A stretch of 64,000 nt of DNA from Kudoa neothunni (Eukaryota; Animalia; Cnidaria), in the NCBI GenBank assembly GCA_964304625.1, contig OZ199838.1, positions 15,055,650 through 15,119,649 on the forward strand, in the 5' to 3' direction. This document shows positions 5,029 to 55,066 of the stretch, in pieces. Position 1 is the first letter of the stretch. Each line of letters begins with the position of its first letter. Under the pieces are notes generated by a model that was given only the letters and a program-made list of their open reading frames with translations, made no database searches and had not been told where the DNA came from. A program made the position numbers and the translations under genes.

Positions 5029-7082
5029 TATATATATATATATATACATTATATAAAGTTCTTATGTCTGTCCGTGTGTGTCAGTTTGCAGTAGTACGCA
5101 TGTGCCACGGAGAAACTTTCTTTAAATATATCTGTAAGTTTGTATTTGAATAGATAACACCATTAATGAAAATAGATCATTCACTTAGAAGTATGAATAT
5201 AATCAATAACATAGTCCGAAGTAAGGAATTTTCTGGTTGTCTTCACAAATAGCAGATTAAAAAACACCTGAATAATATCGATATTTGTTTATTTCTGATT
5301 GATAGACAAATAAAATGAACTTTTACTCGTTATATAGAAAAAAGAATCTCTTATTTATCGTATAGAATATTCTAAAAAATTTTACATATGCCTGTTCGGA
5401 GTACTTTTGAGACAAATAAAACCTATTATCGTCACATTACAAGAGTTGTCGCATTTCCCTTAAAATTTGAAGCATAAACAAGTTATTTGATATGTAATTT
5501 CTCCTTTCGAACGTTATGGATATAGTTAAGCAAAATAGACTATGGTCATTTTAAATAAAACACATAATTTGAGATAATAAGTTGTTACCACGTTGAAATA
5601 ATTCGAGTCTTTATATGTATCCTAATTATTCCTTACCCCCAGACCTTGAGGTTAATATTCAAATCAATATACTGTTTTCTTTATTCTCGCATTAATTTAT
5701 TATGATATAAAAGCTGCATAAAAATACAGTCCCTTCTCAATGCCTGCCATGTAAGTTAATAAGAAATTATCGGTCTGTTCGATCTAACCGATATTTTCAC
5801 AAAGTTTTCGTTAATCTAAGAATAGTTCAGTACGAAGAGATTTTTTTTAGGGCAGTCAAACAGTACGTTAATTTTTAAAAAGGTGCATCCTTCAAGAAAA
5901 CCATTTGATGTTTAAGCATTACTGCAATTTTTCAAACCAAAAACACCTTTACATTTTTGATTTAATCGGATTTTGTTAATTAAATGTGTATATTTTTGAA
6001 CCAATAAGTATTCTTGATAAAAAGTAAGGTTGGATTTATTTATAAATAGGGAAATTTTGTTACAGTAATGAATACGTAAGTTACTGCTCACAGCTTTTCA
6101 AAACATCAATGGCATCATTATAAAATTGCGATAAAAGGAGTAACAATTACTATTTATATTTCCTAGGCATCTTAAGTTTATTTTGTTTTTTTATCGTTTG
6201 TGGACTAATAATAAATTTTATAATTAGAAGGATTAATTTTTATCACAAAATTCTGAAAAGAACTGAAAGTCCTATTTAAGTTGCTTAATGATTTTGTTTC
6301 ATAAATAGCTGAACTTTAATCGCTAATTACATTTCTTTTAAAATTTAGGTCATCATAGTTTTGGTCAATAATTTGTAAGATACAGTTAAAATTACCCATT
6401 AATTTCTCTCCATACCTCTATTTATATTTATATTTGAATGGAAAGTGTGCGCATAATTTCGTTTATCTAAATCATCACATTGCAAAAATAATGACAAGCT
6501 TTAAAATGCAACAATTAAAATAGAAAAATAAAATTAAAATTTTCTGTCACACTGTACCAGGCAAAACTAGGCATTAGCGCTATTTACTTAAAAATCAAAA
6601 AGACTATAATCTGCGCCAGGTGTTAACCTACTTGGCTGGGCAAGGAAGCCTTCGCGAAGAGGGGCTTTTGCGCTAGTTAGTAATACAAACATACAACTCT
6701 GTAATGAAGCAGCGGCACGCGATAAAACCACAATTCGCTAACTAATAATACCTCTCCCGTGGCGACGGCCGATCATAATATTCAAGTTATTATATGATTA
6801 TATAGAGGTCACTACAAATCCAATTTTTAATTTCGTTCATATATCAAATAACTTATTCTGCTTAATGTTTATAAAGTCGTATCTAACAATGTATGACACT
6901 TTATAAGGTTAGTTTTTTCAAATTAATTCATTAACTATCAAGTCAAATGTAAATAATTAGTTCGAAGATAACATGTATAATGGTTTTTGTTATGAATTTA
7001 GGCAAATTACTTAGCTGAAAAGAAATATTTAAGTTGTACACGGATAACTCCTGCGCAAACTAGTGCGATGGAGGATAAACAT

Positions 7083-12284: not shown

Positions 12285-14014
12285 CTCTATATCATCACAT
12301 TTCACCTGTTTTATATTCATGTGCACGTCGCAAGACGATTCGACAATCTGGATGTTATGATCCTTTGCAATAGCCACGTTCTTTTTATGTATAAATGTAG
12401 GGTTGATGTTTAAACTAACTAGGATTTTTAATCCGATAATGCGGCCTTATTCTAAAGTTTTCAATTAAATTTTACTTTAACTCCAAAATTGCTAAAAACT
12501 GAATAATGCAGCTGTCGAAAACGTAAAAATTCAAATTCAATATAAATAAGCTTCTCAATCAACCTTTTCTTATGGAAAGCACCTAAAAGTTAATTTTTTA
12601 GCGAATTCATTTCAGGATTATCTTATGGCCCTCATAAATATTAAATTAGTTATATATAATGGAGTATGTTAAAAACACACTCATTTTAATATTATTTGAT
12701 ATTATCAGTAATATTTACGAGGAAATAGATAGAACTGATATGAAGAACGGATTGATACACTTTGTAAAATCCGTCCATTTATATTTTCATTAAATAGATA
12801 GGATATCTTAATTTAGGCTATAGTCCACAAGACTCTGATTAAGATTCATTCAATGACATTTTGACTGGAATGTTATTTTTTTCTCTTGACAAAGGTTAAT
12901 GATATTAGAAAGGATTATAGTTTGAAGTTTGGTCGTGTTCATATTTACTACTATTCATGTAATTTTTATTCCCTAATTTACTACGGAATTTGTACAAAGA
13001 CACAAACTAATGACGCGGATATTTTTAATCTTAAGTGACGCCCACAATTGCGTAGTGTCCATTTTAACTACTAGCAATTCCTATTAATAATTGACTTGTA
13101 GAGTGTATTTTCTAAGAATCTATTGTAATCTGTGATTTCTAGCCTATTGTTATTGTCCTCGGGGGCTAATAATAGTTATTTACAATCAAACCACACTTAA
13201 CTTGATATTATTATTATTCGTGTCACTGGCCACTTCCTTTAAAAAAATCCGTTGACTTTATGCAGTATATGTGGGGTTGGACGTTATTTTAATGGTTCCA
13301 ATTTTGGCGCAAATGCTTGTATATATCAGAAGATTAACGTTGTCATAGAAACTAACGATCCATTGGAAATCTATTGCTGAGTATTACTAGAAATACAAAA
13401 CAACATGGATATTTTAAGGTTAAAGTTTAATTTTGTGCGTAATAACTTTTTTTGGTTACTGATTGAAAAACACGGGTTGCTTCAAATGTCTCACAACTGT
13501 TAGCGAGATAATTAATATTGTAAGGACGACTTAACATTTTCATCATCCCGGCCAACTAAAGAATATTATTGGATGGTTTTAGGTTATTAGAATCGGTAGT
13601 GTTATCATTTTACAAAGGTTTTATCGTATTTAATATTGCGATAATCTTGAATTATGATAAGAAATTTGAAGGTTGATTCGGATTGTTTACTTTGATAACT
13701 AAAAATATTTGTTGGATTTTTGTTCAAAATTTATATTTGATTGAGCAGTATAAAAGAATAAAAAATTCATTAAACCTAATGTTTATTATTTGATATTCAT
13801 AAATAAATTTGCGGTCAAATGAACTAATAAACATCTTTTTATTCACAAATAAGTTTAGCTCGAACCAATCTACTATAAATACCAATAATCGATTCAGCCT
13901 TAAAATTACGACGTGGGCTTAGAAAATTACAATATCATGACATTATTGTTGATGATAATAATAGAGTAAAATTGTAGATAACGACCACCAACAACTCACG
14001 ATAGGATTTATTTT

Positions 14015-17000
14015 ATGTTTGTTGGGTTTGGAATGTTCAAGTTGATATATTTATCTATCTGCTACATTTTTTGTCTTCAGCGCGCATTTTCACTGAGTGG
14101 AAACAGTTTTCTGTTGCAAGATTTTGAATTGACCGGATTAAGCGTTGATAACAATGAGGTTACTGAAACCTCTCTTTTTGGCTATTCGGTGGCTACATTT
14201 GGTGACTAGTATGATAGTTTGTCAGCTAGAATTAATGTCCACACTAACTTTATTATTAATTAGTATATATATTTCGGCACCCTTAGCTAGAACTTCTCGT
14301 TCAGGAACCCAGTTTTCTACAGGAAGGATATACAAATGTTGGTTTTCGCACTTGACGTCACCAACAAATTGTAGCCCTTTGACCGAATTAGGTATGATTT
14401 ATTATATAAATTTTTCCAACAACTTATACAATTGTCTTAGATGAATATAGTAATTCAAAACCTTTTGACCTTTTGATGGGTTACACTTTGTCAAAATATC
14501 TGGACGACCGAATTTATGTGATTACACCTTTTAAAATACAAAATTAATAAATTTTTCATCGAAAATAGATTTGTGCTCCTAATGCTTTCCTACAGCATGA
14601 TGATACATTAACTAACAATTGCATGTTTTTCAACCCTTTAAATGATGGTGTTGAGCTTAATACTGACCTGCACGGTATTTTCGAACTTTGATATTGTCTC
14701 ACTTCAACTATTAGTTTCACAAAGTGATATTGGTTTATTTATGGATCATGATATTGATAGTGGTTGTTTGGTTGTTGGAAGGTGATCTGAGTTGATTTTG
14801 AATGTTCTAATTAGGTTTTAGCTCAAAAACCTACTCCAATTTTAATTATAGACTGACTTGCGGGACACCACCTAATTATGTCTATAAGAATTATGCGAAT
14901 AGACGAGACACAACCTCGTTTCCTTGTATTGAGTTCTATTATCAGCATTATGAAATACGTTTTCTAGATCACACTGGTGTCGTTGTTTTTGGAGAAGATA
15001 CTAATAGTAAATATGTTGGTTAATCTTTGGTTATTATCGAAAACATTTTTAGTTGTGACGGTGGTGTATGTGCTACCAAAAGATGGGAATGCAGTGACTA
15101 TAGTACGATTTATGTCCAAACGTCTACAGCATAATAATTTTTTTATTTAGTATTACGACAGATATACCAAATCTAATCTGCAAGAGATGGCACATGACCA
15201 AAATGGAAACAAATTTGTCCCGAGTTATGAAGTAAGCGATTACGAATATTTGAGTTGCACATTAAAGCATGTATGTGTGTAGATGAATGATGGTTTGGGT
15301 AGTCAAATTCTAAAGTACAAATTGTCTGGGTAGATTTTTAATTTTGTGGCTGGTATTATGTTATCTAACTAAAATTTCTTCCGTGTGTCTATAGCGATGT
15401 TATATTGCTAATAATGACAGCACCTCTCCGATTTTTCGGTCATGGGTCGGTCGTCATATTTAACTATGGGAGTAAAGTGTTATCGCATCAAATTTTTGGT
15501 CGTGATTATGGCGAAATGTTCGGTTATTCAATATGTTTTGTCCAATATTCGGTTCAAAAAAGTTTTTGTTCTTTTTTGTAATGTAAAATTAATCGTTATT
15601 AACTAGGGTTGGCAATATTGGCTCCTCATGGCGGAGCTGATAAGATGGGTTACGTCATTATCCGAATGTTTAATGAACAGGGGAAATTTGAGGGTTCTGT
15701 AAGACGAAAATTTTGTTGCTTACGAAATTTAAATGTTTAAGGCAACAACATATGATTTAAATCAATACATCGCCAACCTGAATGACGAAGTCTTTGCTTA
15801 TAGACTACATCCTGACGTATACGATGTAACGGAACAACAAGGTAATTAATGTATGATAGTTTTGATTAAGAATGAGTCTGTGTAGGAGCTGCTCACGCCG
15901 GTGGATTTTTACTATCTGTCAATTCAAATCCCGGGAAAATTTATAGGTTCACGTATTTTCGAGGCTGTAATAATTTTGTTTTAATTTTGAACGTTTAGTG
16001 AACAGAATGTCAGAGAGAGTACTACTACAGTTTTGCCTGAATATAGTTTGGGAAATGATGAGATAATTGGATTGGATAAGAGTTCAGAATTCTATCAGTA
16101 ATTTGCCATATTATTTTCGAATAAATTTTTTAAACCACAGTATAGCTTTTCTATCGCACAAAAAATTACATTAGAAGCCGAACATACTATTGAGATTGAA
16201 AAATTTTTAACCAACTCAAGTACACTTTCGCATTAAAAATATTAGTGATTAATATTTATGTTTATTTAGACAATAAATGGGGTGTAGAGTTAGATCCTCT
16301 TAGTCTGCATAACTTTATTAAATTTGATAGCGAAGACTTTGGTCGATTGCTGATAAGGCCGACACGATACATTAAACACTCCGAACATGATAATAAATAT
16401 GAATTTACTGCCATCATTGAAATGAATATAAGAAAAACTATAGATTTAAGCTTAGTGGAAGGTTTTAATTTGAAACTTAAATGTGGTCCATTGAGACATC
16501 TCACTGATGCAAGTTATTTTCTCAATGTTCAAAGGGATACACTCGAAGTTGATCTACCGGTTAAACTCGATATACTTAAAATCGCGGATGTTTCCTCTCA
16601 TCAACCTCAAGGAGGACGAATGGTTATTAACCCAGGGGATACATTTCAGTAATTTACTGCGATGTCCTCCTATTATCGATATCTTTACAATTAGCCATAT
16701 CGACACACATCGACACACACACATATATGAGTCAGTGGTTGTTGATATAAGTAATAATATAAATGCAATATTGGGCTCAACATTGGTTGTAAAATATCCC
16801 GAGAAAAAGAAACTCTTGGCTTGTCTTACAACTCTTTATGGGGTACGTTATCTTATGCTAGATAATTTCGTGAAGATTCTTCCTTGCTCAACTTAATGAT
16901 TAGGAATTGAAGGCTGAAACGGAAATTATTACCGGTAAAAGAGTGTCTAAAATTGGTGTTAATAACATACCACTGGAAGGGGTAATTATTCATTTTCGGT

Positions 17001-20092: not shown

Positions 20093-23000
20093 CAGGGATC
20101 ATCAAAAATTAATTTTTACGTTTGCAATCAATTTTCTTCTTTACAATCAATTAATTGTATTTTCGGATCTCTGCAATCAATTATTTCAATTAATTGCAAT
20201 AATTGCAATGTATTTATTAGCGCACATAATTATCCATAGTAGAATATTATATTTTTTTTGAGTTACACGTGTAGTTAATTTAATTTTTAATTATTTTAAA
20301 GTTATTCCTAAAATTATAGATTCAAAAATTTAATGTAACCCAAGAATTTTAAGAAAAGGTTAAGGTTTGACTTAAATAGTTTCTTCTACAGAATTCTTTT
20401 TATGGGCAGCTTTATACGAATGAATACTAAATCGCCTTAACAGGATTTCAGCTTGAAAAAATTTAATTTTTAATTTTTAAATATATAAAGAACTGAACTA
20501 ATTTAAATAAGAGAAAATGATTCATTTATCAAAATATCCTGATGAAACTTGCATATTCTTCAAACCTTGGTATTTAATGCTTATTTCTGCTAACGATAAA
20601 CAACCTAACATCAACTTAATAAATTACTAACGTGAAAATCTGACGTTTCCTAGTAATATGTGTGTAGTGGCAATAAATCTCGGCGGAAGCTTATAATCTA
20701 ATCATTTCTAATAAGGAAAGGCATTGTTACTCTCTCCCACATTGTCACTGATAATTTTTTAAATCTTTCTGAATAACGACTTTTATAATTGTAAATCTCT
20801 AAATCGATTATTATTTTCAAACCTTTTAATATTGTTATAATAAGGGCTGTTTTAAGCTTAAAAAGGGGAGTTAGTAATCAGTAATTAGTTTAATGTCATT
20901 GGTAATTAATGAAAAGGTATGTTTTATTTCTTGACATTGTTTAAATCTTTATTTAAACGTCTAAACGAAATTCTATTACAATCACAATGTAGCGAACTGA
21001 CTTATTGTAGTCAATTATATATGGGTGCAAAAGCCCAACAGCTACTTATTGGCCAGTATTAATGATAGTGATTAGGAATTAAGTAATTACCTAATAATTA
21101 CAGCCAACTTTGATCAATATCCTCCTTTATAAGGCCAAAGTAATATATATTAGATACTCAAAAAAAACTGATAAAATCTAATTTACATTAAATCTTAAAA
21201 ACCTCAAATATACGCCATAATAAGAAAAATTTTTCTTACACATGTGCACTTAAGATCACACATATACCGACAGTTGACTCATATACATACATAGATTGAT
21301 ACCAGTAATTATTTTGTACGATATTTAATTCACAACTAATAGATCAACACAAAAACACACACAAAATATGTTTAGAATAATGTTTTGTAACATAAGATAT
21401 TACTTCGCTTCATCAATTTAATGAAGCTATTTTTGAAATAATTTTTTCATTCCAAAAACGTTTGTTGAATTTTAAGAACAACTGCATCTCGAGATTAATT
21501 GGGGATAACCTTTGCCTTATATCGTCATAAGTGTATCCCGCGGTTGAGAAAAATCTTTCCACCAAATTAGACGTTGGAAGGATAAAATTTGTGGTTTCAT
21601 ACAATTTTCTATTCTGAGACATCGCTATTTTTCGCTTTCGCAGTATATTGTGAGCAAAATCATCAGATTTAGTAATTTCTACATCATTAACCATCTCCAT
21701 CGAATTAAGTTTCAGGATTCGAACCTCCCGTTGTTCATCCCATGTCAGTTCTTGTTCCTTACTTTGTTGAATTTTAGACAGAGCCGCTTCGAATATCGTA
21801 CATTCTCCGATATTCGAAGCGGCTCGTATATATTTAGCCATTGAAGGATATTCTTTAATTAATTCATCAAACAAATATCGACAATCAGCAATACTGATTG
21901 ATGGATTTTGCAACGCCAAAGTAACCGAGTTTAGCTTTTTCAATATCTCACTTAGAGATTCTATTTCAGCATTTTCTCTTGGAGTTGGAAAAAAATCCAG
22001 TAGGCATTTTTCTTTCGTAAAAAGAGGCTCGGCCAATATTAACTTTAATCGATCATAACGATCTACCATATTCGCTATACTTGACCATCTTGTATCATTT
22101 TTTTGAATTGGCCTTAGTGGCGTAAACTGTCTTAAAAGCCCTGACATTTTCAAACTTTTCATTTTTCCCATCAATAAATTTATTTTATCAATCAACAATT
22201 CGTAAGACTTTAGTAAGTCCATAGCAGCTAAATTAAAACGGTGGGAGGCGCAGCCAACCAATGGCAAATTACATCGACTCGCCAACGCTTTATTTACTGG
22301 AGCGTTGTCACCACAAATCGCCACGACATTATCAAGAGATTTCTCATATATTTTCAAAATATATTCAATTAATTCATAATGATTGTCGGCAGTGAATCCT
22401 GTTTCTTTCAGCATTGGCGAAAATGATAAAAGGACGGTCTCATAATTCAATGAATCATTTACGTTGTACGCAGCAAAAACAGCTACAAAGTGGGTCGATT
22501 TTTTGGTCCAACCATCAAGAATGATACAAAACTTTGAAGGTAAAAGGTCAGAAATTTTTTTTTCCACTGCCCTTGTTGTTAAGTCCATATACTTTTTGAA
22601 TGTGTTTACCGAAACTGGGGAAAGGCTAGTATACATCCTCGTAAGATCATCTTCAATAAAGCTAAATGGTTTTAGTCCATAACAGATCCAATTTAGCCAA
22701 TCATAGATAGTTTTCCCCTTATTCGTCGTTTTAAAAGTACTAGAAAAATCTTCCAGAGTTAAAGGTGCTCTTATCATTTGTTTATATTCTAAGTGCTGTG
22801 ACTTTATGTGGTTAAAAAGATTCGTCCAACCAGTATTCTTTTTTTGTGCTAACTCTTTGCCGCATTTACACTTCCACCTTGATTTTTCTGAATCTGTTTC
22901 AGTAAAAAACATTTTCACAATTTCTTTTGTATCGTGGCTCATTTTGAAACAACAACAACAACACGAGGAGTTGGGATCAAAACATAGTTAGTAAATTTAG

Positions 23001-47617: not shown

Positions 47618-47699
47618 GCAGTGATGGCCGAGTGGTTAAGGCGTTAGACTAGAAATCTAATGGGTTCATCCCGCGTAGGTTCAAATCCTGCTCACTGCG
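47618..47699 (+). tRNA. tRNA-Ser(AGA), 82 nt
   Basis: Acceptor stem GCAGTGA/TCACTGC plus G discriminator. A box TGGCCGAGTGG. Anticodon stem TTAGA/TCTAA with loop CT-AGA-AA. Long variable arm GGG-TTCAT-CCC. B box GGTTCAAATCC. Confidence 0.97.
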
Positions 47700-47704
47700 T
47701 GTAG

Positions 47705-47717
47705 TTTTTGATTTTTT
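47705..47717 (+). terminator. RNA polymerase III terminator (T5-GA-T6)
   Basis: Oligo-T runs starting 6 nt after the tRNA discriminator. Confidence 0.8.
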
Positions 47718-47758
47718 GACCTACCTAAGCTGAATAACTTTTTGTGCTGATTCTAACG

Positions 47759-50700
47759 ATGTCACTTTCATCTTCCTGTGACATCGATAAGTTGGAGTTT
47801 TACTCGTCGAGCCTGGGCGACGTTGTGTTCCACTATTATTCGCTATATTTGCAAGCCAAGGGCAAAGTGAGGAAGTTGCCCTTGGTTATTAAGACAGTAG
47901 CAAACTTTGTAAGGAAGTTTGTTGCATATTTTGAGAGTTCTCGAGAAAGTTTTGATAACATCATGGCGACACCGAATGGCGCCGACATTTTGAGGAGCGT
48001 TATTTCTCTAATATATCCAGAACGAATATCTGATTCTAATACATCTGAAAATATGGAAGAAGTGCCTTCTATTGATACCTTGAAAGCTGATGGAAAACTA
48101 ACGCTTCGGAACATGTGGTTGGTTATTTCTCGCTCGATGAAAAAATCTCCCAAACTTCTATTAGAAAGACGTCAACGATATATGAAAGCCTTGGAGGAGT
48201 TCAAGCAAGCATTATTAGATGAATTGATTCGTTTGTATGCTGAAGAAAATAATTTCCAAAGTGTATGTGAGGCGACTCTGATTCCGCCATTACCCCAGAA
48301 GAAAAGCAAATCTACCCAATATTCTGTTGATACCACGTTTCCTGAGCTTTTAATTCCTCCTGATGGAGTGATTAGAGTGACGGAAGCTGTTTCTATCAAC
48401 CCTGACGATTATTTGCCTGCAAATGCACGTCCCACTACAATTACCACTCCTATGATTCACTCAAAATCCCAATCTACTATTGAAGAAACTCTCACTCAAA
48501 CATCTGGCGATAACAAGAATGATAATGATGGAGTTTGTCCGAAAAACCTTTCCGCCACCACCACGCAACAATCTAATTCAAATTTGATGTTGAAAAACTC
48601 ACCGAACAAATTTGAATCGAACGAATTTAATCAATTGGATTCAGTCGAACTCGAACTCAATTTGAAATTGGTCGAGTTGGCTTCCAAAATCGCAACTGAT
48701 TCCAAACCTTGTCAAACCCCAATTATTGAATGCCCACCAACCTCCTCCACTTCAATTTGCGTCAACAAATCTACTCCAAAATTGGACAGATCACTCCCAT
48801 CAATCACCAACAAATCACCAGAGATTTCCACCAATAATGTATCCTCCAATACCCCACCTGAATGGTTTAATGAAGCAATTCTTGATATTTCACAAGAAAC
48901 CCATGACAGAAACTTGGCTGATTTCTTGAACAATTACCAAACTCCAAACGATCTAACCAACAACCCATTCACCATTTTCCTCCATGATGAAGATTATACT
49001 TCAATCACATCCCCATCTCAAAACAATAGCCAAGATGTGATTGTAGTAGATTCAAACATAAACTTGGACAATACACCTACAATTCTCGACCAAGGATTTG
49101 TGGAAATTATTGATGAGAACCCGTCCCCTATCAAACCTACTACAATTAACAATCCTATCATCGTTCCCTCTTCACCTAGTTCGCCCAATAAACCTATCAG
49201 TGCTAATTCTTCTTCCATTTCCTTTGAAGATATTGATGCAACACAATATTATTCCTGTCTTAATGAAACTATGATCGAAAAATCAATGCTCAAGCCTACC
49301 CAAACCAATCCAAAATCCACTAGAACTATTAAGACAACATCAAACTCCATCCCAACCATTACTTCTCAAGATATTACTGATTTTGTGTCAAATATCAAAA
49401 CCTCAACTAATCAATCTAAACCCAAAAAACCCACCACTGCCACTGAACCTAGGAAATCTCTTTCCACAATAAAACCAAAAGCACACTTGCAACCTAAAAT
49501 TCCTACTACTCTTCAATGCACTGGCTATTCAACTATTCAAATTCCTCAAACTCAACATTCACTTACACCACAATCTCAAATTCCAGGTCCCTCACGCCTG
49601 CATTTTCCACCTGAACCTACAGCGGATACAACACCAACTATTCTCACCCAATCATCACAACTTCAATCTCAATCTCAATTGAATGATAACCCATCCACTA
49701 GTCAACCTCAAGGCGGCACTAACGACTTTGCCGCCAAACAAACTCGACGAAAACAGGAACGCAAGGACCTGTTTGAAAAAGCGTCGACCGAATTAATCCA
49801 ACTGGTCAACACCCATAACAACAGAGACGAACCAGTTGAAGAATTCTATGGGAAGTTCATAGCTACAGCAAAGTCTCATGCTAAAGCTCTTGGTCTTCAC
49901 TACGTACCCAACTTTGCACCAAAATCGGCTCCAAATAAACCCCAATTCCCTCAACAAGTCCAAGAACCACCAACGGATATTAATATGGACAAAAATAAAA
50001 TCAAACGCCTTCGTGCTATGTACCGCACCAATCCTAAAAGATGTTTTAGGGAAGTTACAGAAGTAACTCCAAAGTGGTGCACCTCAACCGCCCAAGGAAT
50101 ATTCGAATGCTTGAATAAACCACCACCTCAACCTCTTCAACCACTTCAACCACTTCAACCCCAACCAACTAATATCACAATTCCAAATTCCCAAGAAACT
50201 CAATCTCAAGTCCAATCAAATGTCTACCCAAATTCCAACGATAACGACGCCTTCTTCTGTGTTGATTCAGAAGAAGTAGCGGTCGCATTAAACAGAGCCA
50301 AATCAGACACATCTGCTGGTACTGATGGAATCTCCATTAAATTTTGGAAACATCTTCCTCAAGGAGACCACATCTTATCAACGATCTTTAATAAAATCAT
50401 CAGAACCAGCGATGTACCATCCGAATGGTTGGAAAGTCGTCTGGTTCTCATTCCAAAAACAAAATCCCCACATCAGTCAAACCCATCCGACTACAGGCCG
50501 ATCTCAGTGACACAAACTATCTATCGATTGTTTATGGCCACGTTAAATTTGAAGCTGAGACCCCACATCCAACTCTCACCCTCTCAAAAGGGTTTTACCG
50601 CTAGTGATGGTTGCTCTGAACACACATTTGTGCTACAAGAAATTCTTGATGAGTCAAGAAGATCTGGAAAAGACTTGTGTGTTGTCTGGCTCGATGTCTC

Positions 50701-52675
50701 TAAGGCATTCGACACAATACCTCACTATGCAATCCACTCCAACCTCCAAAGATTCGAATTTCCACCGAATATTCAACAAATATTTAAAAGTTTATATGAT
50801 GGAAGTTACAACCAAATTAAAGATTCTTATGGCTCTTCCATCAATCTATCACTCAACCAACAAGGCGTCCGACAAGGGTGTCCCATGTCTCCCCTTTTGT
50901 TCAACATGGTCATTGATGATCTGTTGGACAAACTGAATGAAACTACGTTTGGCTTCAACCTACACAACCAAAACATTAGCGTCCAAGCATTTGCAGACGA
51001 CCTAGTGTTATTTTCTCATTCACAAAATGATATGCAAAAGCTGCTGTCAATCTGTGATGGATTTATGTCGAATCTTCAAATGAAATTCAATCCCGCGAAA
51101 TGTAATAAACTCACCCTTACCTTCAATCGCAATAAAAAACGATCTATTAATGACCCCTTGTTGGACCGCAACTATCCACTCAAAGTTAATTCCGAAGAAA
51201 TTCCTCCCTTAACCGACTACTATAAATATCTGGGTTCAATGGCGAACCTACAATCTTTCAAATCTCTTCCACCTTGTTTTGAGGAATTCTCTGAAAAAAT
51301 TAACAAATTGGCATCGTCACCTCTTCTACCTTTCATGAAGACGGAGTTGTTAAAAACATATCTTCTTCCCACCCTCGACTTCTCTCTCAAGAATCACACC
51401 TTGAGAGTTGAGCAATTAAAAAAGGTCGACACCGCAATCCTCACATGCGTAAGAAAATGGTTGAACATTCCTCACACCACTTCTACACACTTTTTCCGCA
51501 CTCCCGTACCACTCGGAGGTCTTGGCATCCGAAGTGTACGAGAAGACTATGCAGCGTTGCGCTTAGCGGCTGGATTGAATGTTCTACATTCTTCAGACGA
51601 CAAAGTTCGAGTTGTTGCCATCCAATCCATCATCAACATAGTCAACTCTAGAACCAAGTCTACCAAAACGGTTCCAGAATACGTCAACCTTGATGCTGAG
51701 GTCAAATCCATCCACGACGTCAGGTCGCTTCTATCCTCAATAAGACTCCATAGAAAAGCGCTTGGCGTCACCATCAAACAACTAAATCAATCCAATTCCT
51801 CCACGTCCCCAATAATCGACCTTGACCCAGCATCCCTCAAAAATCCACCCACTTCCCGTTTCCAACACCTTCAACAAGAACCAACCCGAATCCGTCTTTT
51901 GCGAAGACACATCCAACAGCAACACCTCGAATCATGGTCTAATCAACCTGACCAAGGTAAGTTGGTGCCTGTTTTCAGTTGGTATCCACCCTCCAACAAA
52001 TGGCTTCGATCTTGCAATATGCGAATCGCCACTCACCGCTTCGCAATCATGGCAAGATTGAATGTCCTTCCCACCAAAACTCACCTCCATCGTATGAAGA
52101 TGTCACCGGACGTTATCGGTCGACACTGTCCTTGTGGTGTAGAAACCCTTGGACATGTGTTAGGCGGATGCAAACGTGGCGAAGCCTTGAGACAGCTTCG
52201 ACATAACCACGTCGTCCAGCTCATCACCACCCAAATTTCAAAGCGCTTCCAACGAAATAATATTCATCAATGGAAGTTGTCCGAAGACAGAATAATTCCA
52301 CTCTCCAGTTCCAATCGACGGCCTGACATTGTCCTGTGGAATGAGAAGAAGAAGTTGGTCCATGTCATTGAAGTTGCTGTCAGCTACGAAAATGGCATGG
52401 AACGACTTGATCAAGTGCTCCAACATAAAAGGGAGAAGTACGCCTCAGAGTGTCAAACACTAGGGCAAATTGGGTACACTGTACTTCAATCTGCTCTGGT
52501 GTTTGGTGCACTGGGGTCGCACCATCCATCAACCGCCGAAACACTTGGTCAATGTTGCCTCATCAAAGCACGGGCATGTCAGAAGAAGTTAATGAAGGAT
52601 ATTACTCACTCTGTCCTTGAGGATTCCAGACTTGTCTGGAATAACCATGTGCAGAGTCGAGTGGTTCCTCATTAA
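47759..52675 (+). CDS. Reverse transcriptase plus CCHC-like knuckle and PD-(D/E)xK restriction-like endonuclease polyprotein, 1638 aa from the first ATG
   Basis: Uninterrupted ORF. GTDGI, RLVLIPK, YRPIS, QKGF, WLDVSKAFDTIPH, GVRQGCPMSPLLFN, AFADDL, YKYLG, GGLGI, ARLNVLPT, C..ETLGHVLGGC, RHN, RRPDIV, IEV..SYE, KREKY and FGALG. Confidence 0.97.
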   Translation: MSLSSSCDIDKLEFYSSSLGDVVFHYYSLYLQAKGKVRKLPLVIKTVANFVRKFVAYFESSRESFDNIMATPNGADILRSVISLIYPERISDSNTSENMEEVPSIDTLKADGKLTLRNMWLVISRSMKKSPKLLLERRQRYMKALEEFKQALLDELIRLYAEENNFQSVCEATLIPPLPQKKSKSTQYSVDTTFPELLIPPDGVIRVTEAVSINPDDYLPANARPTTITTPMIHSKSQSTIEETLTQTSGDNKNDNDGVCPKNLSATTTQQSNSNLMLKNSPNKFESNEFNQLDSVELELNLKLVELASKIATDSKPCQTPIIECPPTSSTSICVNKSTPKLDRSLPSITNKSPEISTNNVSSNTPPEWFNEAILDISQETHDRNLADFLNNYQTPNDLTNNPFTIFLHDEDYTSITSPSQNNSQDVIVVDSNINLDNTPTILDQGFVEIIDENPSPIKPTTINNPIIVPSSPSSPNKPISANSSSISFEDIDATQYYSCLNETMIEKSMLKPTQTNPKSTRTIKTTSNSIPTITSQDITDFVSNIKTSTNQSKPKKPTTATEPRKSLSTIKPKAHLQPKIPTTLQCTGYSTIQIPQTQHSLTPQSQIPGPSRLHFPPEPTADTTPTILTQSSQLQSQSQLNDNPSTSQPQGGTNDFAAKQTRRKQERKDLFEKASTELIQLVNTHNNRDEPVEEFYGKFIATAKSHAKALGLHYVPNFAPKSAPNKPQFPQQVQEPPTDINMDKNKIKRLRAMYRTNPKRCFREVTEVTPKWCTSTAQGIFECLNKPPPQPLQPLQPLQPQPTNITIPNSQETQSQVQSNVYPNSNDNDAFFCVDSEEVAVALNRAKSDTSAGTDGISIKFWKHLPQGDHILSTIFNKIIRTSDVPSEWLESRLVLIPKTKSPHQSNPSDYRPISVTQTIYRLFMATLNLKLRPHIQLSPSQKGFTASDGCSEHTFVLQEILDESRRSGKDLCVVWLDVSKAFDTIPHYAIHSNLQRFEFPPNIQQIFKSLYDGSYNQIKDSYGSSINLSLNQQGVRQGCPMSPLLFNMVIDDLLDKLNETTFGFNLHNQNISVQAFADDLVLFSHSQNDMQKLLSICDGFMSNLQMKFNPAKCNKLTLTFNRNKKRSINDPLLDRNYPLKVNSEEIPPLTDYYKYLGSMANLQSFKSLPPCFEEFSEKINKLASSPLLPFMKTELLKTYLLPTLDFSLKNHTLRVEQLKKVDTAILTCVRKWLNIPHTTSTHFFRTPVPLGGLGIRSVREDYAALRLAAGLNVLHSSDDKVRVVAIQSIINIVNSRTKSTKTVPEYVNLDAEVKSIHDVRSLLSSIRLHRKALGVTIKQLNQSNSSTSPIIDLDPASLKNPPTSRFQHLQQEPTRIRLLRRHIQQQHLESWSNQPDQGKLVPVFSWYPPSNKWLRSCNMRIATHRFAIMARLNVLPTKTHLHRMKMSPDVIGRHCPCGVETLGHVLGGCKRGEALRQLRHNHVVQLITTQISKRFQRNNIHQWKLSEDRIIPLSSSNRRPDIVLWNEKKKLVHVIEVAVSYENGMERLDQVLQHKREKYASECQTLGQIGYTVLQSALVFGALGSHHPSTAETLGQCCLIKARACQKKLMKDITHSVLEDSRLVWNNHVQSRVVPH

Positions 52676-52749
52676 CTTGCCATAACTTTTACCTTATATT
52701 AGTTTATTAACTTATTTCTCTGGCCTACGGCCATTTATGTTGTATAATT

Positions 52750-52794
52750 ATCTAATGGGTTCATCCCGCGTAGGTTCAAATCCTGCTCACTGCG
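52750..52794 (+). pseudogene. Duplicated 3' half of tRNA-Ser(AGA) (nt 38 to discriminator)
   Basis: 45 bp identical to 47655-47699. The 5' half and anticodon are absent. Confidence 0.95.
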
Positions 52795-53025
52795 TGTAGT
52801 TTTTGATTTTTGACCTACCTAAGCTGAATAACTTTTTGTGCTGATTCTAACGATGTCACTTTCGTCTTCCTGTGACATCGATAAGTTAGAGTTTTACGCG
52901 TCGAGCCTAGGCGACGTTGTGTATCACTACTACATCTTGTATTTACATTTCAAGGAAAAATGAGGAAGTCGGCTATAGTTCCTAAAACTGGAGCTAACTT
53001 CGTGAGGAAGTTTGTTGAATTTCAG
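52750..53025 (+). mobile_element. 5' relic of a diverged relative of the same retrotransposon, in tandem
   Basis: Same leader and ATG (52853). Translates MSLSSSCDIDKLEFYASSLGDVVYHYYILYLHFK/(frameshift)KMRKSAIVPKTGANFVRKFV versus MSLSSSCDIDKLEFYSSSLGDVVFHYYSLYLQAKGKVRKLPLVIKTVANFVRKFV. Homology ends at about 53025. Confidence 0.88.
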
Positions 53026-55066
53026 AAGTTATTAACTGCAAATGATTATTGCTCAGAGCACTTTTTCTTCCTTCATGAAATTCTAGGCCAATCGAGCTGA
53101 TCTGGAAAAGACTAGTGTTTCTTGGCACAGCTTACACAAAATTCTCAAAACTATCTCCCATCACACCATTCTTGAATAAGTTAAAAATCCGATTCATCAT
53201 GCTAAAACAAGCTTTTTCAGACAAAAATAGAATAACAAAAACTTCATACAAGAGTTTAGTAGAAATAATTTCGATATCCACTCAAAAGAAACGAACATTA
53301 GTCAGGGTTTCACATATCTTCTCAAATATTTAATAAATTGATTTTTTTTCAAATCTAATTATCTAAGAAATTGGGACCAGCCATTATAAATAGTGTTTAT
53401 TACAAAACAGCATTATCTAACGGAACCGGACAGAAAAATTTTATATGGGAGAACATAACGCAATTTCTATTTATAGTTTAATCCACGTGACATAGATGAT
53501 TCAACACGTTTTACAAATATCAATTTAAAATTTAAACCAACAAATACAAAAAATATAAACAAAATAAATGAATAAAAAATATACAAATTAACTAGTATTA
53601 AAAAGAATGGAAATATACAAAACAAAAATAACACATAAGATAACGAATTAAGTAAAGACTGGCGTGAAAATACGTTCAAACCCTTATCTTTTCCCCCTAC
53701 GATGTAGAAATCAATAGCAACATCTGAATCGGTTAAAACTATTATGTTAGATTTTGCTTGCATCATACTCACGTATCACTGCGTCAACGGTATTGTGGAA
53801 GTTGTTATAGATTACGCTGGAGTGACAGATTCACGGAACATCATAAAACTAGACTAAAATAAATTCAAAGATATTTGTAAAATAACGCAACAATCCGCAC
53901 AGGAGATGCTACGTTTAAACATACACAAACCAACTATAAACAATGGAATCAACCATTAAAGCCGAACTCAATATAAAAAGAATTGCGGCAAGAAAAAATA
54001 TCCGCATGAAAATTCATGAATGAAGAAAATTATCAATGATTTATATGCTTATAAACAGACGGTCTACGTAAAATTTCGTTTTGTTGAAACAAGTCCCTAA
54101 TAGTTGACTCCTATATTTACAAATGAATTTATTCGTAAGCACTACTTTCTCCATATTTTTGTTCATAAAGCAATGTACAAGATAAAAAAAGATTCTAACA
54201 CTTAATTTCTCAACTGTAGGATGTTGTAAGGCGGCTATCACAGGAAATGAACAGTCTTTATTTCGATAGAATTCTTTTCTACAAGTAAAGGAACCTTAAT
54301 AAAGAAGTATTTAAGGGGATTAAAATTATTATAATATACTCTTCTAACAAGAAATTTAAAGGCAATTATTTAAATTAAACACAGCCAACTTAAAATGGTA
54401 TTCCACCTCTCCCAATCGTCGATGCTGGAGTTTTCCAACTGAACATGAAGACAGTGAAGAGAATACATTCCCCAGGGAAATTATAGTTTATTTAAAAAAT
54501 TGAAACATAATAGCAGAAAGTCACACAATATGGATTAAAATGTGTTCTTTGGCGAAACAAAGTATTTTTTAGCCAACGATATATTTGACGGGGTAACGAA
54601 AATCGATTGAAGACAAATTGTAGATTATTATTTCATGAATTGATTTTTTTATTTTTCATCCCACCACAATCACAATATTAAGAAATTTTGGTAAACTGGT
54701 ATTTAACGTGGAACGGGTGACCTTTGGTATTGCCATGACCCGCGCATGCGAACAATAATAAAATAGACGAAGGCTTTCCGGTTCTAGATGCACGTTCGTC
54801 CACTTTGGTTTACTGCAGAAGAATATTTAAAAATTAATCTTTCATTCCGTACATTTTTTGAAAACAATAGATTAAAGTTATTGTTCTACATTCTTCCTGG
54901 TGTATTATTCGATGATCATCGTTTAATTAATTGTTCAAAAACTTTTATTTAAAGTAGGCGAACACTTGTTGGTAATCGCGACGGGGATATTAATTATTAT
55001 CGCGGTAAATAATATATTCGATAATAAAATGAATATTAAAATTCACGATTGATATAAATTGCATTA

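What the first reader, a model, noticed from the sequence alone, without database searches (positions are those of the whole stretch)
47618..52794. tRNA-Ser(AGA)-targeting R2/NeSL-type retrotransposon that inserts in the anticodon loop yet leaves the tRNA gene intact
Seen: an intact 1638-aa RT-RLE ORF starts 59 bp after a complete tRNA-Ser(AGA). The element's 3' end, which has no poly(A), joins directly to a second copy of the tRNA 3' half beginning at nt 38 (or 39), followed by the same terminator and leader. Established: RLE non-LTR elements (R2, R4, NeSL, Utopia) prime reverse transcription at a sequence-specific nick, so the 3' junction marks the cut, here the anticodon loop. Inference: insertion regenerates a functional tRNA upstream, either because the element carries the tRNA 3' half plus terminator at its 5' end (analogous to prokaryotic tRNA-integrating islands) or because a widely staggered second cut makes a TSD of at least 45 bp. 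Either way the insertion would be near-neutral for the host and the target reusable. I recall tRNA-associated NeSL-group families in other invertebrates but none for tRNA-Ser with target restoration; novelty needs checking.
Basis: partly seen in the sequence, partly recalled or inferred. Interest (0 to 1): 0.92.

Follow-up and report, generated by a model that had tools for sequence, protein, structure and literature searches.

The report
Retrotransposon that rebuilds its tRNA-Ser target
An intact R2-like jumping gene sits inside the anticodon loop of this small genome's only tRNA-Ser(AGA) gene, yet a complete copy of the gene stands in front of it. It belongs to a distinct group that has done the same at about 16 other tRNA genes, which shows how a selfish element can occupy essential single-copy genes without breaking them.

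Summary
An intact tRNA-Ser(AGA) gene (47618-47699) is followed after 59 bp by an open 1638-aa ORF with RT, CCHC and restriction-like endonuclease (RLE) motifs. The element has no poly(A) and ends directly on an exact copy of tRNA nt 38-82 (52750-52794).

- **Correction:** the "same terminator and leader" after that half is the 5' end of a second, older, internally deleted and diverged copy. The locus is therefore a two-unit stack.
- **Single-copy target:** the tRNA-Ser(AGA) gene is the only one detected in the 40-Mb assembly.
- **Family pattern:** related families sit the same way, with the 3' junction at 37|38, behind Thr(TGT), Lys(CTT), Ile(AAT) and a Lys-like tRNA. Three foreign contigs show the same unit structure. 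Of 38 tRNA genes listed in this genome, 16 carry such an element.
- **Phylogeny:** the tRNA-linked proteins form their own clade among RLE elements and have no N-terminal zinc fingers.
- **Shared 5' block:** the head element and the next unit share an identical block that starts at nt 38 and has a variable length of 115, 220 or 690 nt. This argues against a fixed staggered cut and for homology-guided 5' joining.
- **Open question:** whether the RNA itself carries the tRNA half is not settled.

This scan found the same phenomenon earlier at other tRNA loci of this genome. I rate it a new variant of a known kind.

The parts
47618..47699 (+). Complete tRNA-Ser(AGA) gene at the head of the stack. 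It is the only copy detected in the genome.
   Evidence: ARAGORN. Rfam tRNA 62.9 bits. The whole-genome DNA and pattern searches find only this gene and a Ser(CGA) paralogue.
47618..47654 (+). tRNA nt 1-37, the unduplicated 5' part that lies upstream of the inferred nick at 37|38.
   Evidence: The repeat starts at 47655, which is nt 38.
47655..47769 (+). Upstream copy of the duplicated block: tRNA nt 38-82, two T-runs, the leader and the first 11 nt of the ORF. It equals 52750-52863 except for one T in a T-run.
   Evidence: Difference profile.
47700..47758 (+). Trailer and leader with two Pol III terminator-like T-runs (T5 at 47705, T6 at 47712). The sister Thr(AGT) family shares TTTTTGATTTT here.
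   Evidence: Sequence, T-run list, Thr(AGT) head.
47759..52675 (+). Single open ORF of 1638 aa (stop codon included in the coordinates).
   Evidence: It is full length in one unitig at single-copy depth.
47759..48253 (+). N-terminal region conserved among the families (22-36% identity to the Ser ORF in the aligned rows). It is predicted helical, has no zinc finger and no known domain. I take it as the candidate target-recognition part (inference).
   Evidence: Alignment A2. No Pfam or PDB match. The AF2 model has pLDDT 55.
50450..51136 (+). Reverse transcriptase domain, with the FADD motif at 50990-51001.
   Evidence: Pfam RVT_1, E 5.9e-37. R2Tg and R2Bm match at E 1e-54 to 1e-68.
52127..52441 (+). 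CCHC knuckle (aa 1457-1471) and restriction-like endonuclease motifs RRPD (aa 1520), VIEVAV (aa 1536) and KREKY (aa 1557).
   Evidence: Residue-by-residue alignment to the R2Tg ORF, E 1e-11. Motif positions.
52676..52749 (+). 3' UTR without poly(A). It has a small hairpin GGCC-TAC-GGCC at 52722-52732 and a terminal TATGTTGTAT motif shared with sister families.
   Evidence: Junction line-up and alignment. In relatives the stem reads GATC/GATC and GGTC/GACC.
52750..52794 (+). Second copy of tRNA nt 38-82, 45/45 identical. It marks the 3' junction of the intact element.
52795..53124 (+). Remnant of an older, diverged relative. It comprises the trailer, the leader, codons 1-57, and then directly a fragment matching aa 943-976 of the RT. 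No further tRNA half lies downstream in the window.
   Evidence: tblastn, alignment, short-query search.

Best explanation
Firm: this is a site-specific non-LTR retrotransposon with an R2-type RT-CCHC-RLE protein. Its lineage is dedicated to the tRNA-Ser(AGA) gene. It belongs to a distinct clade in which each family occupies one tRNA gene. Inferred from the R2 paradigm: the endonuclease nicks the antisense strand between tRNA positions 37 and 38 and primes reverse transcription there, which sets the precise, poly(A)-less 3' junction. My reading of the 5' side: the new copy is joined by homology rather than by a second cut at a fixed distance. The end of the cDNA pairs with target sequence lying downstream of the nick. 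The sense strand of the target, from nt 38 up to the crossover point, then primes second-strand synthesis and so ends up on both sides of the element. At an occupied site the homology is the resident element's 5' region, which gives duplicated blocks of 115 to about 690 nt. At an unoccupied gene the only possible homology is the tRNA 3' part itself. The template RNA therefore probably carries it, for example as a co-transcript with the preceding tRNA or unit, as R2 does with 28S. The two T-runs that terminate the rebuilt tRNA travel with the element. The outcome is that the essential single-copy gene stays whole, stays a target, and collects a head-to-tail stack in which the newest copy is next to the gene.
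For: RT and RLE identity. Junction at 37|38 in six further families of this genome and in foreign contigs L034-L036. Single-copy target. Genome-wide link: 16 of 38 listed tRNA genes have an RT-RLE match 1.7-5 kb downstream on the same strand, and 16 of 19 RT loci have a listed tRNA at their head. Variable duplicated block: no substitutions over 115 nt (Ser) and 220 nt (Thr-TGT), and 3 over 690 nt (Lys-CTT). Each block starts at nt 38 and is followed by about 35% divergence. Minimal duplication at the single-element Ile locus: the tRNA part plus (G/A)TTTTT only. T-runs inherited with the lineage: the sister Ser and Thr(AGT) families share TTTTTGATTTT at different loci. The unoccupied Ser(CGA) gene has only GTTTTG. 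In L036 two families share the tRNA part 35/35 but the trailer only 19/22. None of about 18 units seen is 5'-truncated. The clade is monophyletic with SH-aLRT 99.
Against: There is no RNA evidence at all. The RNA runs with this species label hold none of the organism's reads, so the 5' end of the template is unknown. No empty site from a related strain or species was available. Shared 5' blocks could instead come from later gene conversion or from RT switching between two RNAs. In the Lys(CTT) stack the shared block is more diverged (about 0.4-1%) than the two X-type bodies are from each other (0.2%), and unequal crossing-over has clearly reshaped that stack. Only one unoccupied tRNA trailer could be read. 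The nick itself is inferred from R2, not shown.
Confidence: 0.6

Rival explanations
1. Classical target-site duplication. The endonuclease makes the second, sense-strand cut at a set place just beyond the tRNA 3' end, 38-50 bp from the first nick. The tRNA 3' part is duplicated from the target, and the RNA carries none of it.
For: Long duplications are known in RLE elements: 126 bp for R9 (cited in PMC13580325), 20 bp for reptile Utopia (PMC4640811), and a 20-bp one seen here in L038. The Ile locus and L034 duplicate only the tRNA part plus 6-9 nt. Different families in one stack share the first 16-22 nt of trailer.
Against: The duplicated blocks at Ser, Thr(TGT) and Lys(CTT) are 115, 220 and 690 nt, so no fixed cut fits. 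The required stagger would vary between close relatives, because the tRNA part is 45 nt for Ser and 36-37 nt for the others. Harmless 5'-truncated insertions would be expected, but none of about 18 units is truncated. In L036 the trailer differs while the tRNA part is identical.
Confidence: 0.15
2. Purely element-borne half. The unit RNA runs from tRNA nt 38 to the end of the 3' UTR and is inserted at a near-blunt break at 37|38. The identical 5' blocks shared with the next unit arose later by gene conversion or unequal exchange between tandem units.
For: The tRNA part is kept perfect in front of live elements, and the T-runs are lineage-specific. Unequal exchange is evident in the Lys(CTT) stack, where a 13.6-kb higher-order repeat has units 99.6-99.9% alike.
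Against: In three independent loci the shared block starts exactly at nt 38 and ends abruptly. Beyond the block the neighbours are only about 65% identical. That is a poor substrate for conversion, and conversion tracts would not be expected to share one fixed end. No promoter or processing signal that would give an RNA starting at nt 38 was found, and Rfam finds no ribozyme.
Confidence: 0.2
3. The element does not enter the tRNA at all. It inserts just downstream of the gene, as Pol III-directed elements do, and carries a tRNA-derived tail at its own 3' end.
For: The linear order tRNA-element-half-flank is formally the same. The Ile locus fits it.
Against: The identical blocks run without a break from the half through the trailer into the next unit's ORF. 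In this model that would span two different elements. The first insertion at a gene would have no source for the tail. RLE relatives define their 3' junction by the nick.
Confidence: 0.04
4. Assembly artefact or an ordinary tandem duplication unrelated to retrotransposition.
For: The repeat is short and collapses in short-read graphs. No single read spanning both copies was seen.
Against: The same architecture is found at 16 tRNA genes of this assembly and in contigs from two other samples. Unitig depth is single-copy for the element and doubled for the repeat.
Confidence: 0.01

Closest known systems
R2 elements (R2Bm, R2Tg; 28S rDNA-specific RLE non-LTR retrotransposons)
   Same: Single ORF with RT, a CCHC knuckle and a PD-(D/E)XK endonuclease. 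Best solved-structure matches are E 1e-54 to 1e-68, and the RLE motifs align. The 3' junction is precise with no poly(A), and the element is strictly site-specific. R2's use of target-homologous sequence in a co-transcript for 5' joining is the model I borrow.
   Different: The target is a single-copy tRNA gene, not multicopy rDNA. The target gene is rebuilt, not inactivated. No N-terminal zinc finger or Myb domain was found. Rfam detects no 5' ribozyme. The clade is separate in the tree.
R9 of bdelloid rotifers (Gladyshev and Arkhipova 2009, cited in PMC13580325)
   Same: An R2-group element that makes an exceptionally long duplication of its target (126 bp). It shows that RLE elements can duplicate tens to hundreds of bp.
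   Different: R9 sits in 28S and its duplication has a fixed length. Here the block is variable, starts at one fixed point, and restores a whole small gene. I know R9 only from the citation and from memory and did not compare sequences.
tRNA-specific NeSL-related families NeSL-1_TV (tRNA-Pro), LIN15_SM (tRNA-Arg) and LIN25_SM (tRNA-Glu) (Kojima and Jurka 2015, PMC4640811)
   Same: RLE non-LTR retrotransposons that insert specifically into tRNA genes.
   Different: They are reported as insertions into multicopy tRNA gene families. The text I could read mentions no restoration of the gene, and the supplementary figure was not available.
Utopia (U2 snRNA-specific, NeSL-related)
   Same: RLE element in a small RNA gene with a variable 5' side and a 0-20 bp TSD. 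A representative found here (P0085 in L038) shows U2 flanks and a 20-bp duplication and about 31% identity to the RT-RLE part.
   Different: It has N-terminal C2H2 fingers and a different target, and it falls in another clade of the tree.
Prokaryotic phages and islands that integrate into tRNA genes
   Same: The mobile element carries or recreates the 3' part of the tRNA gene, often from the anticodon loop on, so that the gene stays functional and reusable.
   Different: Those use tyrosine integrases and DNA recombination between attP and attB. Here the machinery is reverse transcription primed at a nick. The resemblance is convergent logic only.
Dada DNA transposons (PMC8869645), and Ty3 and Dictyostelium TRE elements
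   Same: Mobile elements that use tRNA genes as safe or recognisable landing sites. Some Dada families also hit the anticodon region.
   Different: Dada disrupts one member of a multicopy family. Ty3 and TRE land beside the gene, not in it. None rebuilds the gene.

Membership tests
RLE-bearing non-LTR retrotransposons (R2 group in the broad sense) | Reverse transcriptase domain of LINE type | tested here: met
   Pfam RVT_1, E 5.9e-37. R2 and L1 ORF2 structures match.
RLE-bearing non-LTR retrotransposons (R2 group in the broad sense) | C-terminal CCHC motif followed by a PD-(D/E)XK restriction-like endonuclease, and no APE domain | tested here: met
   CPCGVETLGHVLGGC, RRPD, VIEVAV and KREKY align to the same motifs of R2Tg. 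No Exo_endo_phos hit.
RLE-bearing non-LTR retrotransposons (R2 group in the broad sense) | Sequence-specific insertion with a precise 3' junction | tested here: met
   All families examined end at tRNA position 37|38, give or take 1-2 nt.
R2 clade proper | Insertion at the R2 site of 28S rDNA | tested here: not met
   The target is tRNA-Ser(AGA).
R2 clade proper | N-terminal zinc finger(s) and Myb DNA-binding motifs | tested here: not met
   No C2H2 or CCHH pattern in aa 1-830. No Pfam hit at E up to 5. No PDB sequence match.
R2 clade proper | Phylogenetic nesting within R2 | tested here: inconclusive
   The quick tree puts the tRNA clade beside a long-branched group of proteins that NCBI names R2 (SH-aLRT 95), and another R2-named protein falls elsewhere. 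No curated reference set was available.
NeSL / Utopia group | N-terminal C2H2 fingers (plus a Ulp1-like protease in NeSL-1) | tested here: not met
   None found.
NeSL / Utopia group | Phylogenetic nesting with NeSL or Utopia references | tested here: inconclusive
   The one Utopia representative identified by its U2 flanks (P0085) lies in a different, well-supported clade.
tRNA-integrating islands and phages (working analogy only) | Tyrosine or serine recombinase and an att core | tested here: not met
   The only enzymatic domains found are RT and RLE.

The most novel reading that the evidence does not exclude
The tRNA 3' part carried in the template RNA would be more than cargo. It would serve as a homology arm that positions both priming and 5' joining, so part of the target choice would be written in nucleic acid rather than in the protein. 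That would explain how close relatives (about 60% identical in RT-RLE) have moved between Ser, Thr and Lys genes, and how one clade came to occupy 16 or more different tRNA genes. It would also make the system a naturally re-addressable, gene-preserving inserter that spreads by retrohoming into the unoccupied allele of a single-copy gene.
Probability: 0.2. Interest if true: 0.92.

Novelty: new variant of a known kind. Interest (0 to 1): 0.78.

Why it matters
Site-specific retrotransposons are thought to survive by hitting multicopy targets such as rDNA, snRNA genes and tRNA families, where losing one copy is cheap. Here the targets are essential genes present once per genome, and the element gets away with it by leaving a complete gene behind.

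- **A third strategy.** This shows a strategy besides "hit a repeat" and "land beside a gene". It parallels what phages and islands do in bacteria, but works by reverse transcription.
- **Consequences for the host.** About two in five of the tRNA genes listed in this compact genome now depend on element-supplied terminators and probably on element-copied 3' parts. The host's translation apparatus and the parasite are therefore physically interlocked.
- **Spread.** A single-copy target implies spread by copying into the homologous chromosome, which is a drive-like mode.
- **Possible use.** A family of R2-like enzymes with many natural specificities, which insert several kilobases without destroying the landing gene, is of clear interest to groups developing R2 for transgene insertion.

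Tried and rejected
1. Expression and RNA 5' ends. The one read-laying run showed no reads of this organism in two RNA runs or in one DNA run with the same species label. No verdict is possible.
2. Pol III read-through as the source of the template. I rejected this because the sense strand has 21 runs of T4 or more.
3. A 5' ribozyme or another known RNA. Rfam at E up to 1 finds only the tRNA.
4. Fold of the N-terminal domain. AF2 on a 5-row alignment gave pLDDT 55, and Foldseek against the PDB gave nothing below E 1. Sequence searches of the PDB and Pfam were also blank.
5. More loci from this genome. The heads and far ends of several stacks, and the trailers of unoccupied tRNA genes, therefore remain unread.
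6. Close kin in metagenome contigs. The best hits were 30-35% identical, and none had the tRNA architecture. L044 has a tRNA-like head but is a different kind of LINE.
7. Naming the organism. The only long ORF besides the element is a hAT transposase, which says nothing about taxonomy.
8. The supplementary figure on published tRNA-specific NeSL relatives is not held.
9. A third tRNA half further downstream in the window. None was found.
Full report
**What is there.**
The window holds one tRNA gene, tRNA-Ser(AGA), at 47618-47699 on the + strand. Rfam scores it at 62.9 bits, far above the cut-off. An ATG at 47759, 59 bp later, opens a frame of 1638 codons with no stop. The window is only 31% G+C, so a frame of this length cannot be chance.

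The protein carries a LINE-type reverse transcriptase (Pfam RVT_1, E 6e-37). Its last 300 residues align to solved R2 proteins. The CCHC knuckle (CPCGVETLGHVLGGC) and the nuclease motifs RRPD, VIEVAV and KREKY lie opposite the corresponding motifs of R2Tg. There is no apurinic-type endonuclease and no LTR.

After the stop codon comes a 74-nt UTR with no A-run. It is followed directly by 45 nt identical to tRNA positions 38-82.

**A correction to the anatomy.**
The similarity does not end with the terminator and leader. It runs for 271 bp into a second start codon and 57 codons of a related ORF. These are followed at once by a 34-codon piece matching aa 943-976 of the RT, and then by unrelated sequence. 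The locus therefore reads: tRNA, intact element, tRNA 3' part, stump of an older and strongly diverged relative. No third half lies further downstream in the window.

Unitigs from a public run cover the whole element in one piece at the depth of the flanks, and the repeat has raised depth. This fits the assembly but does not prove the order.

**The target is a single-copy gene.**
A DNA search of the whole 40.26-Mb assembly with the 82-nt gene returns only three matches: the gene itself, the downstream half, and a tRNA-Ser(CGA) at 93% identity. A pattern search for the anticodon arm with up to three mismatches gives the same two genes. The intact element is also unique. All other matches in the genome are 64-73% identical at the DNA level.

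**The pattern is a property of a whole clade.**
I fetched six regions with related ORFs. In each, the ORF starts 50-100 bp after a complete tRNA gene on the same strand. The tRNAs are Thr(AGT), Thr(TGT), Lys(CTT) and Ile(AAT), plus a Lys-like tRNA whose head lies outside the fetched piece.

- **3' junctions.** Wherever the 3' end is preserved, the element ends on the 3' part of that same tRNA, beginning at position 38 or within one or two bases of it.
- **Other samples.** Contigs from two other public samples, which encode proteins 45-59% identical in the RT-RLE part, show the same units separated by tRNA 3' parts.
- **Genome-wide link.** An RT-RLE protein search gives 62 matches in 19 loci. 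A tRNA model search lists 38 genes. By coordinates, 16 of the 38 tRNA genes have an RT-RLE match 1.7-5 kb downstream on the same strand, and 16 of the 19 loci have a listed tRNA at their head. Chance would give well under one. The tRNA list is a lower bound, because only 63 of 2556 candidates were scored.

**Where the family stands.**
In a library of 1.8 billion representatives, only six proteins are 43-59% identical. The next tier drops to about 30%.

- One protein of that next tier sits between U2 snRNA sequences with a 20-bp duplication, so it is a Utopia element.
- In a quick maximum-likelihood tree, the eight tRNA-linked proteins form one clade (SH-aLRT 99). This clade is separate from the Utopia representative and from proteins that NCBI names R2. 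Its deeper position is not reliable, and no curated references were available.
- Within the clade, Ser is sister to Thr(TGT) plus the Lys-like family, so close relatives use different tRNAs.
- The N-terminal 830 residues have no zinc finger, no Pfam domain and no match to solved structures. Only the first 165 or so residues are conserved among families. The model was too poor for a fold search to mean anything.
- Published work already records NeSL-related families specific for tRNA-Pro, tRNA-Arg and tRNA-Glu (PMC4640811). tRNA targeting by RLE elements is therefore not new in itself.

**How the gene is rebuilt: what the sequences say.**
This locus alone cannot decide between them, because the downstream flank is another element. 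Five observations from the wider set bear on the question.

- **Variable duplicated block.** The head element and the next unit share a block that begins exactly at tRNA nt 38 and then stops.
  - At Ser there is no substitution over 115 nt (47655-47769 against 52750-52863, with one T lost in a T-run). About 7% differences follow for 60 nt, and about 35% after that.
  - At Thr(TGT) there is none over 220 nt, then about 35%.
  - At Lys(CTT) there are three substitutions over 690 nt, then an abrupt break.
  - Beyond the block the neighbours belong to different families. A cut at a set distance cannot give 115, 220 and 690 nt. The block looks like target DNA copied up to a crossover inside the resident element.
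- **Minimal duplication.** Where there is no resident (the single, old element at Ile), the duplication shrinks to the tRNA part plus (G/A)TTTTT. The two neighbouring elements in L034 do not share a leader, and there the duplication is the tRNA part plus about 9 nt.
- **T-runs travel with the element.** The two T-runs that follow every rebuilt tRNA appear to be inherited with the element, not with the locus.
  - The sister families at Ser and Thr(AGT) share TTTTTGATTTT a few bases after two different tRNAs.
  - The one unoccupied tRNA I could read has only GTTTTG.
  - The native flank at Ile has a single T5.
- **L036 trailers.** In L036 two unrelated families share the tRNA part 35/35 but the next 22 nt only 19/22.
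- **No 5' truncation.** None of about 18 units is 5'-truncated. Truncated copies are common in R2 and would be harmless if the target alone supplied the duplicate.

**The mechanism I favour.**
The steps are marked as shown or inferred.

- **Shown:** the architecture, the junction position, the variable block, and the single-copy status.
- **Inferred from R2 biochemistry:** an antisense-strand nick at 37|38 that primes reverse transcription.
- **Inferred from the blocks:** the 5' end is joined when the cDNA pairs with target sequence downstream of the nick. The sense strand up to the crossover then primes second-strand synthesis and is duplicated.
- **Further inference:** at a virgin gene the only homology available is the tRNA 3' part. 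The template RNA therefore probably includes it, most simply as a co-transcript with the preceding tRNA or unit, in the way that R2 uses 28S sequence.

I put 0.6 on this package. I give 0.15 to a plain staggered cut, and 0.2 to a purely element-borne half with the blocks made later by conversion. The remaining two rivals get very little. These are insertion beside the gene with a tRNA-derived tail, and an artefact. The Lys(CTT) stack has clearly also been reshaped by unequal exchange, so post-insertion events are real and weaken the argument.

**Consequences.**
Each insertion leaves a working gene at the head, so the gene can be hit again. Stacks then grow with the newest copy next to the gene. 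This fits the intact ORF here and at Thr(TGT) lying in front of decayed remnants. A family with a single-copy target can spread only into the same site on the sister or homologous chromosome, which is retrohoming.

**Relation to earlier notes of this scan.**
After forming my reading I looked up the scan's notes. Other agents had reported the same phenomenon at the Cys, Gln, Trp, Lys(CUU), Lys(UUU) and Asn genes of this genome. One note names the organism as a myxozoan. I re-derived the Lys(CUU) and Lys-like cases myself. I did not test the others or the organism's name.

**Limits.**
There are no RNA data, no empty sites, no long reads and no labelled reference set. 

Noticed in passing
window 52722-52749, and the equivalent places in L022, L025 and L030: Four close families share a small 3' UTR hairpin about 15 nt before the junction, with paired changes in the stem (GGCC/GGCC, GATC/GATC, GGTC/GACC). 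It is followed by a conserved TAT(G/A)TTGTAT motif and is probably the RT's recognition site. More distant families lack the hairpin.
   Followed up: partly
window 21413-22942 (-): An intact 509-aa hAT-type transposase ORF (zf-BED and hAT dimerisation domains in its relatives). Its closest relatives are in metagenomes, octopus and oomycetes.
   Followed up: partly
G000:C3:3348000-3381999 (L024, L031, L025, L032): The tRNA-Lys(CTT) stack is a higher-order repeat. Units 2+3 and 4+5 are 99.6-99.9% alike with a 13.6-kb period, as expected from unequal exchange between two X-type bodies. Unit 3 contains a 200-N assembly gap.
   Followed up: partly
G000:C2:1010000-1029999 (L023, L030): Several units of the Lys-like stack have the coding region in two long overlapping frames of about 930-985 codons each, in two different families. 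This could be decay or a programmed frameshift.
   Followed up: no
L037:3500-3924: In a foreign contig, one ORF stop is followed within about 85 nt by the start codon of the next element, with no tRNA part in between. This could be a deletion, a different family habit, or a spliced transcript if the assembly is from RNA.
   Followed up: no
L034:100-160 and 5150-5195: The leaders of both foreign elements contain what looks like a short intron (GTAAGT ... TTTTTTAG) ending just before the start codon. If real, the template RNA is unspliced.
   Followed up: no
L038 (JGI metagenome contig): A Utopia-type element flanked by U2 snRNA sequence, with a 20-bp duplication (TCTGTTCTTATCAGCTTAAC) and N-terminal C2H2 fingers. 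It served as a labelled outgroup.
   Followed up: partly
G000:C1:1681700-1682300 (C1_1668k reverse-complement 13720-14300): The 3' end of the Thr(AGT) element is replaced by G+C-rich foreign sequence, probably another insertion. Its junction with the tRNA half is therefore lost.
   Followed up: no
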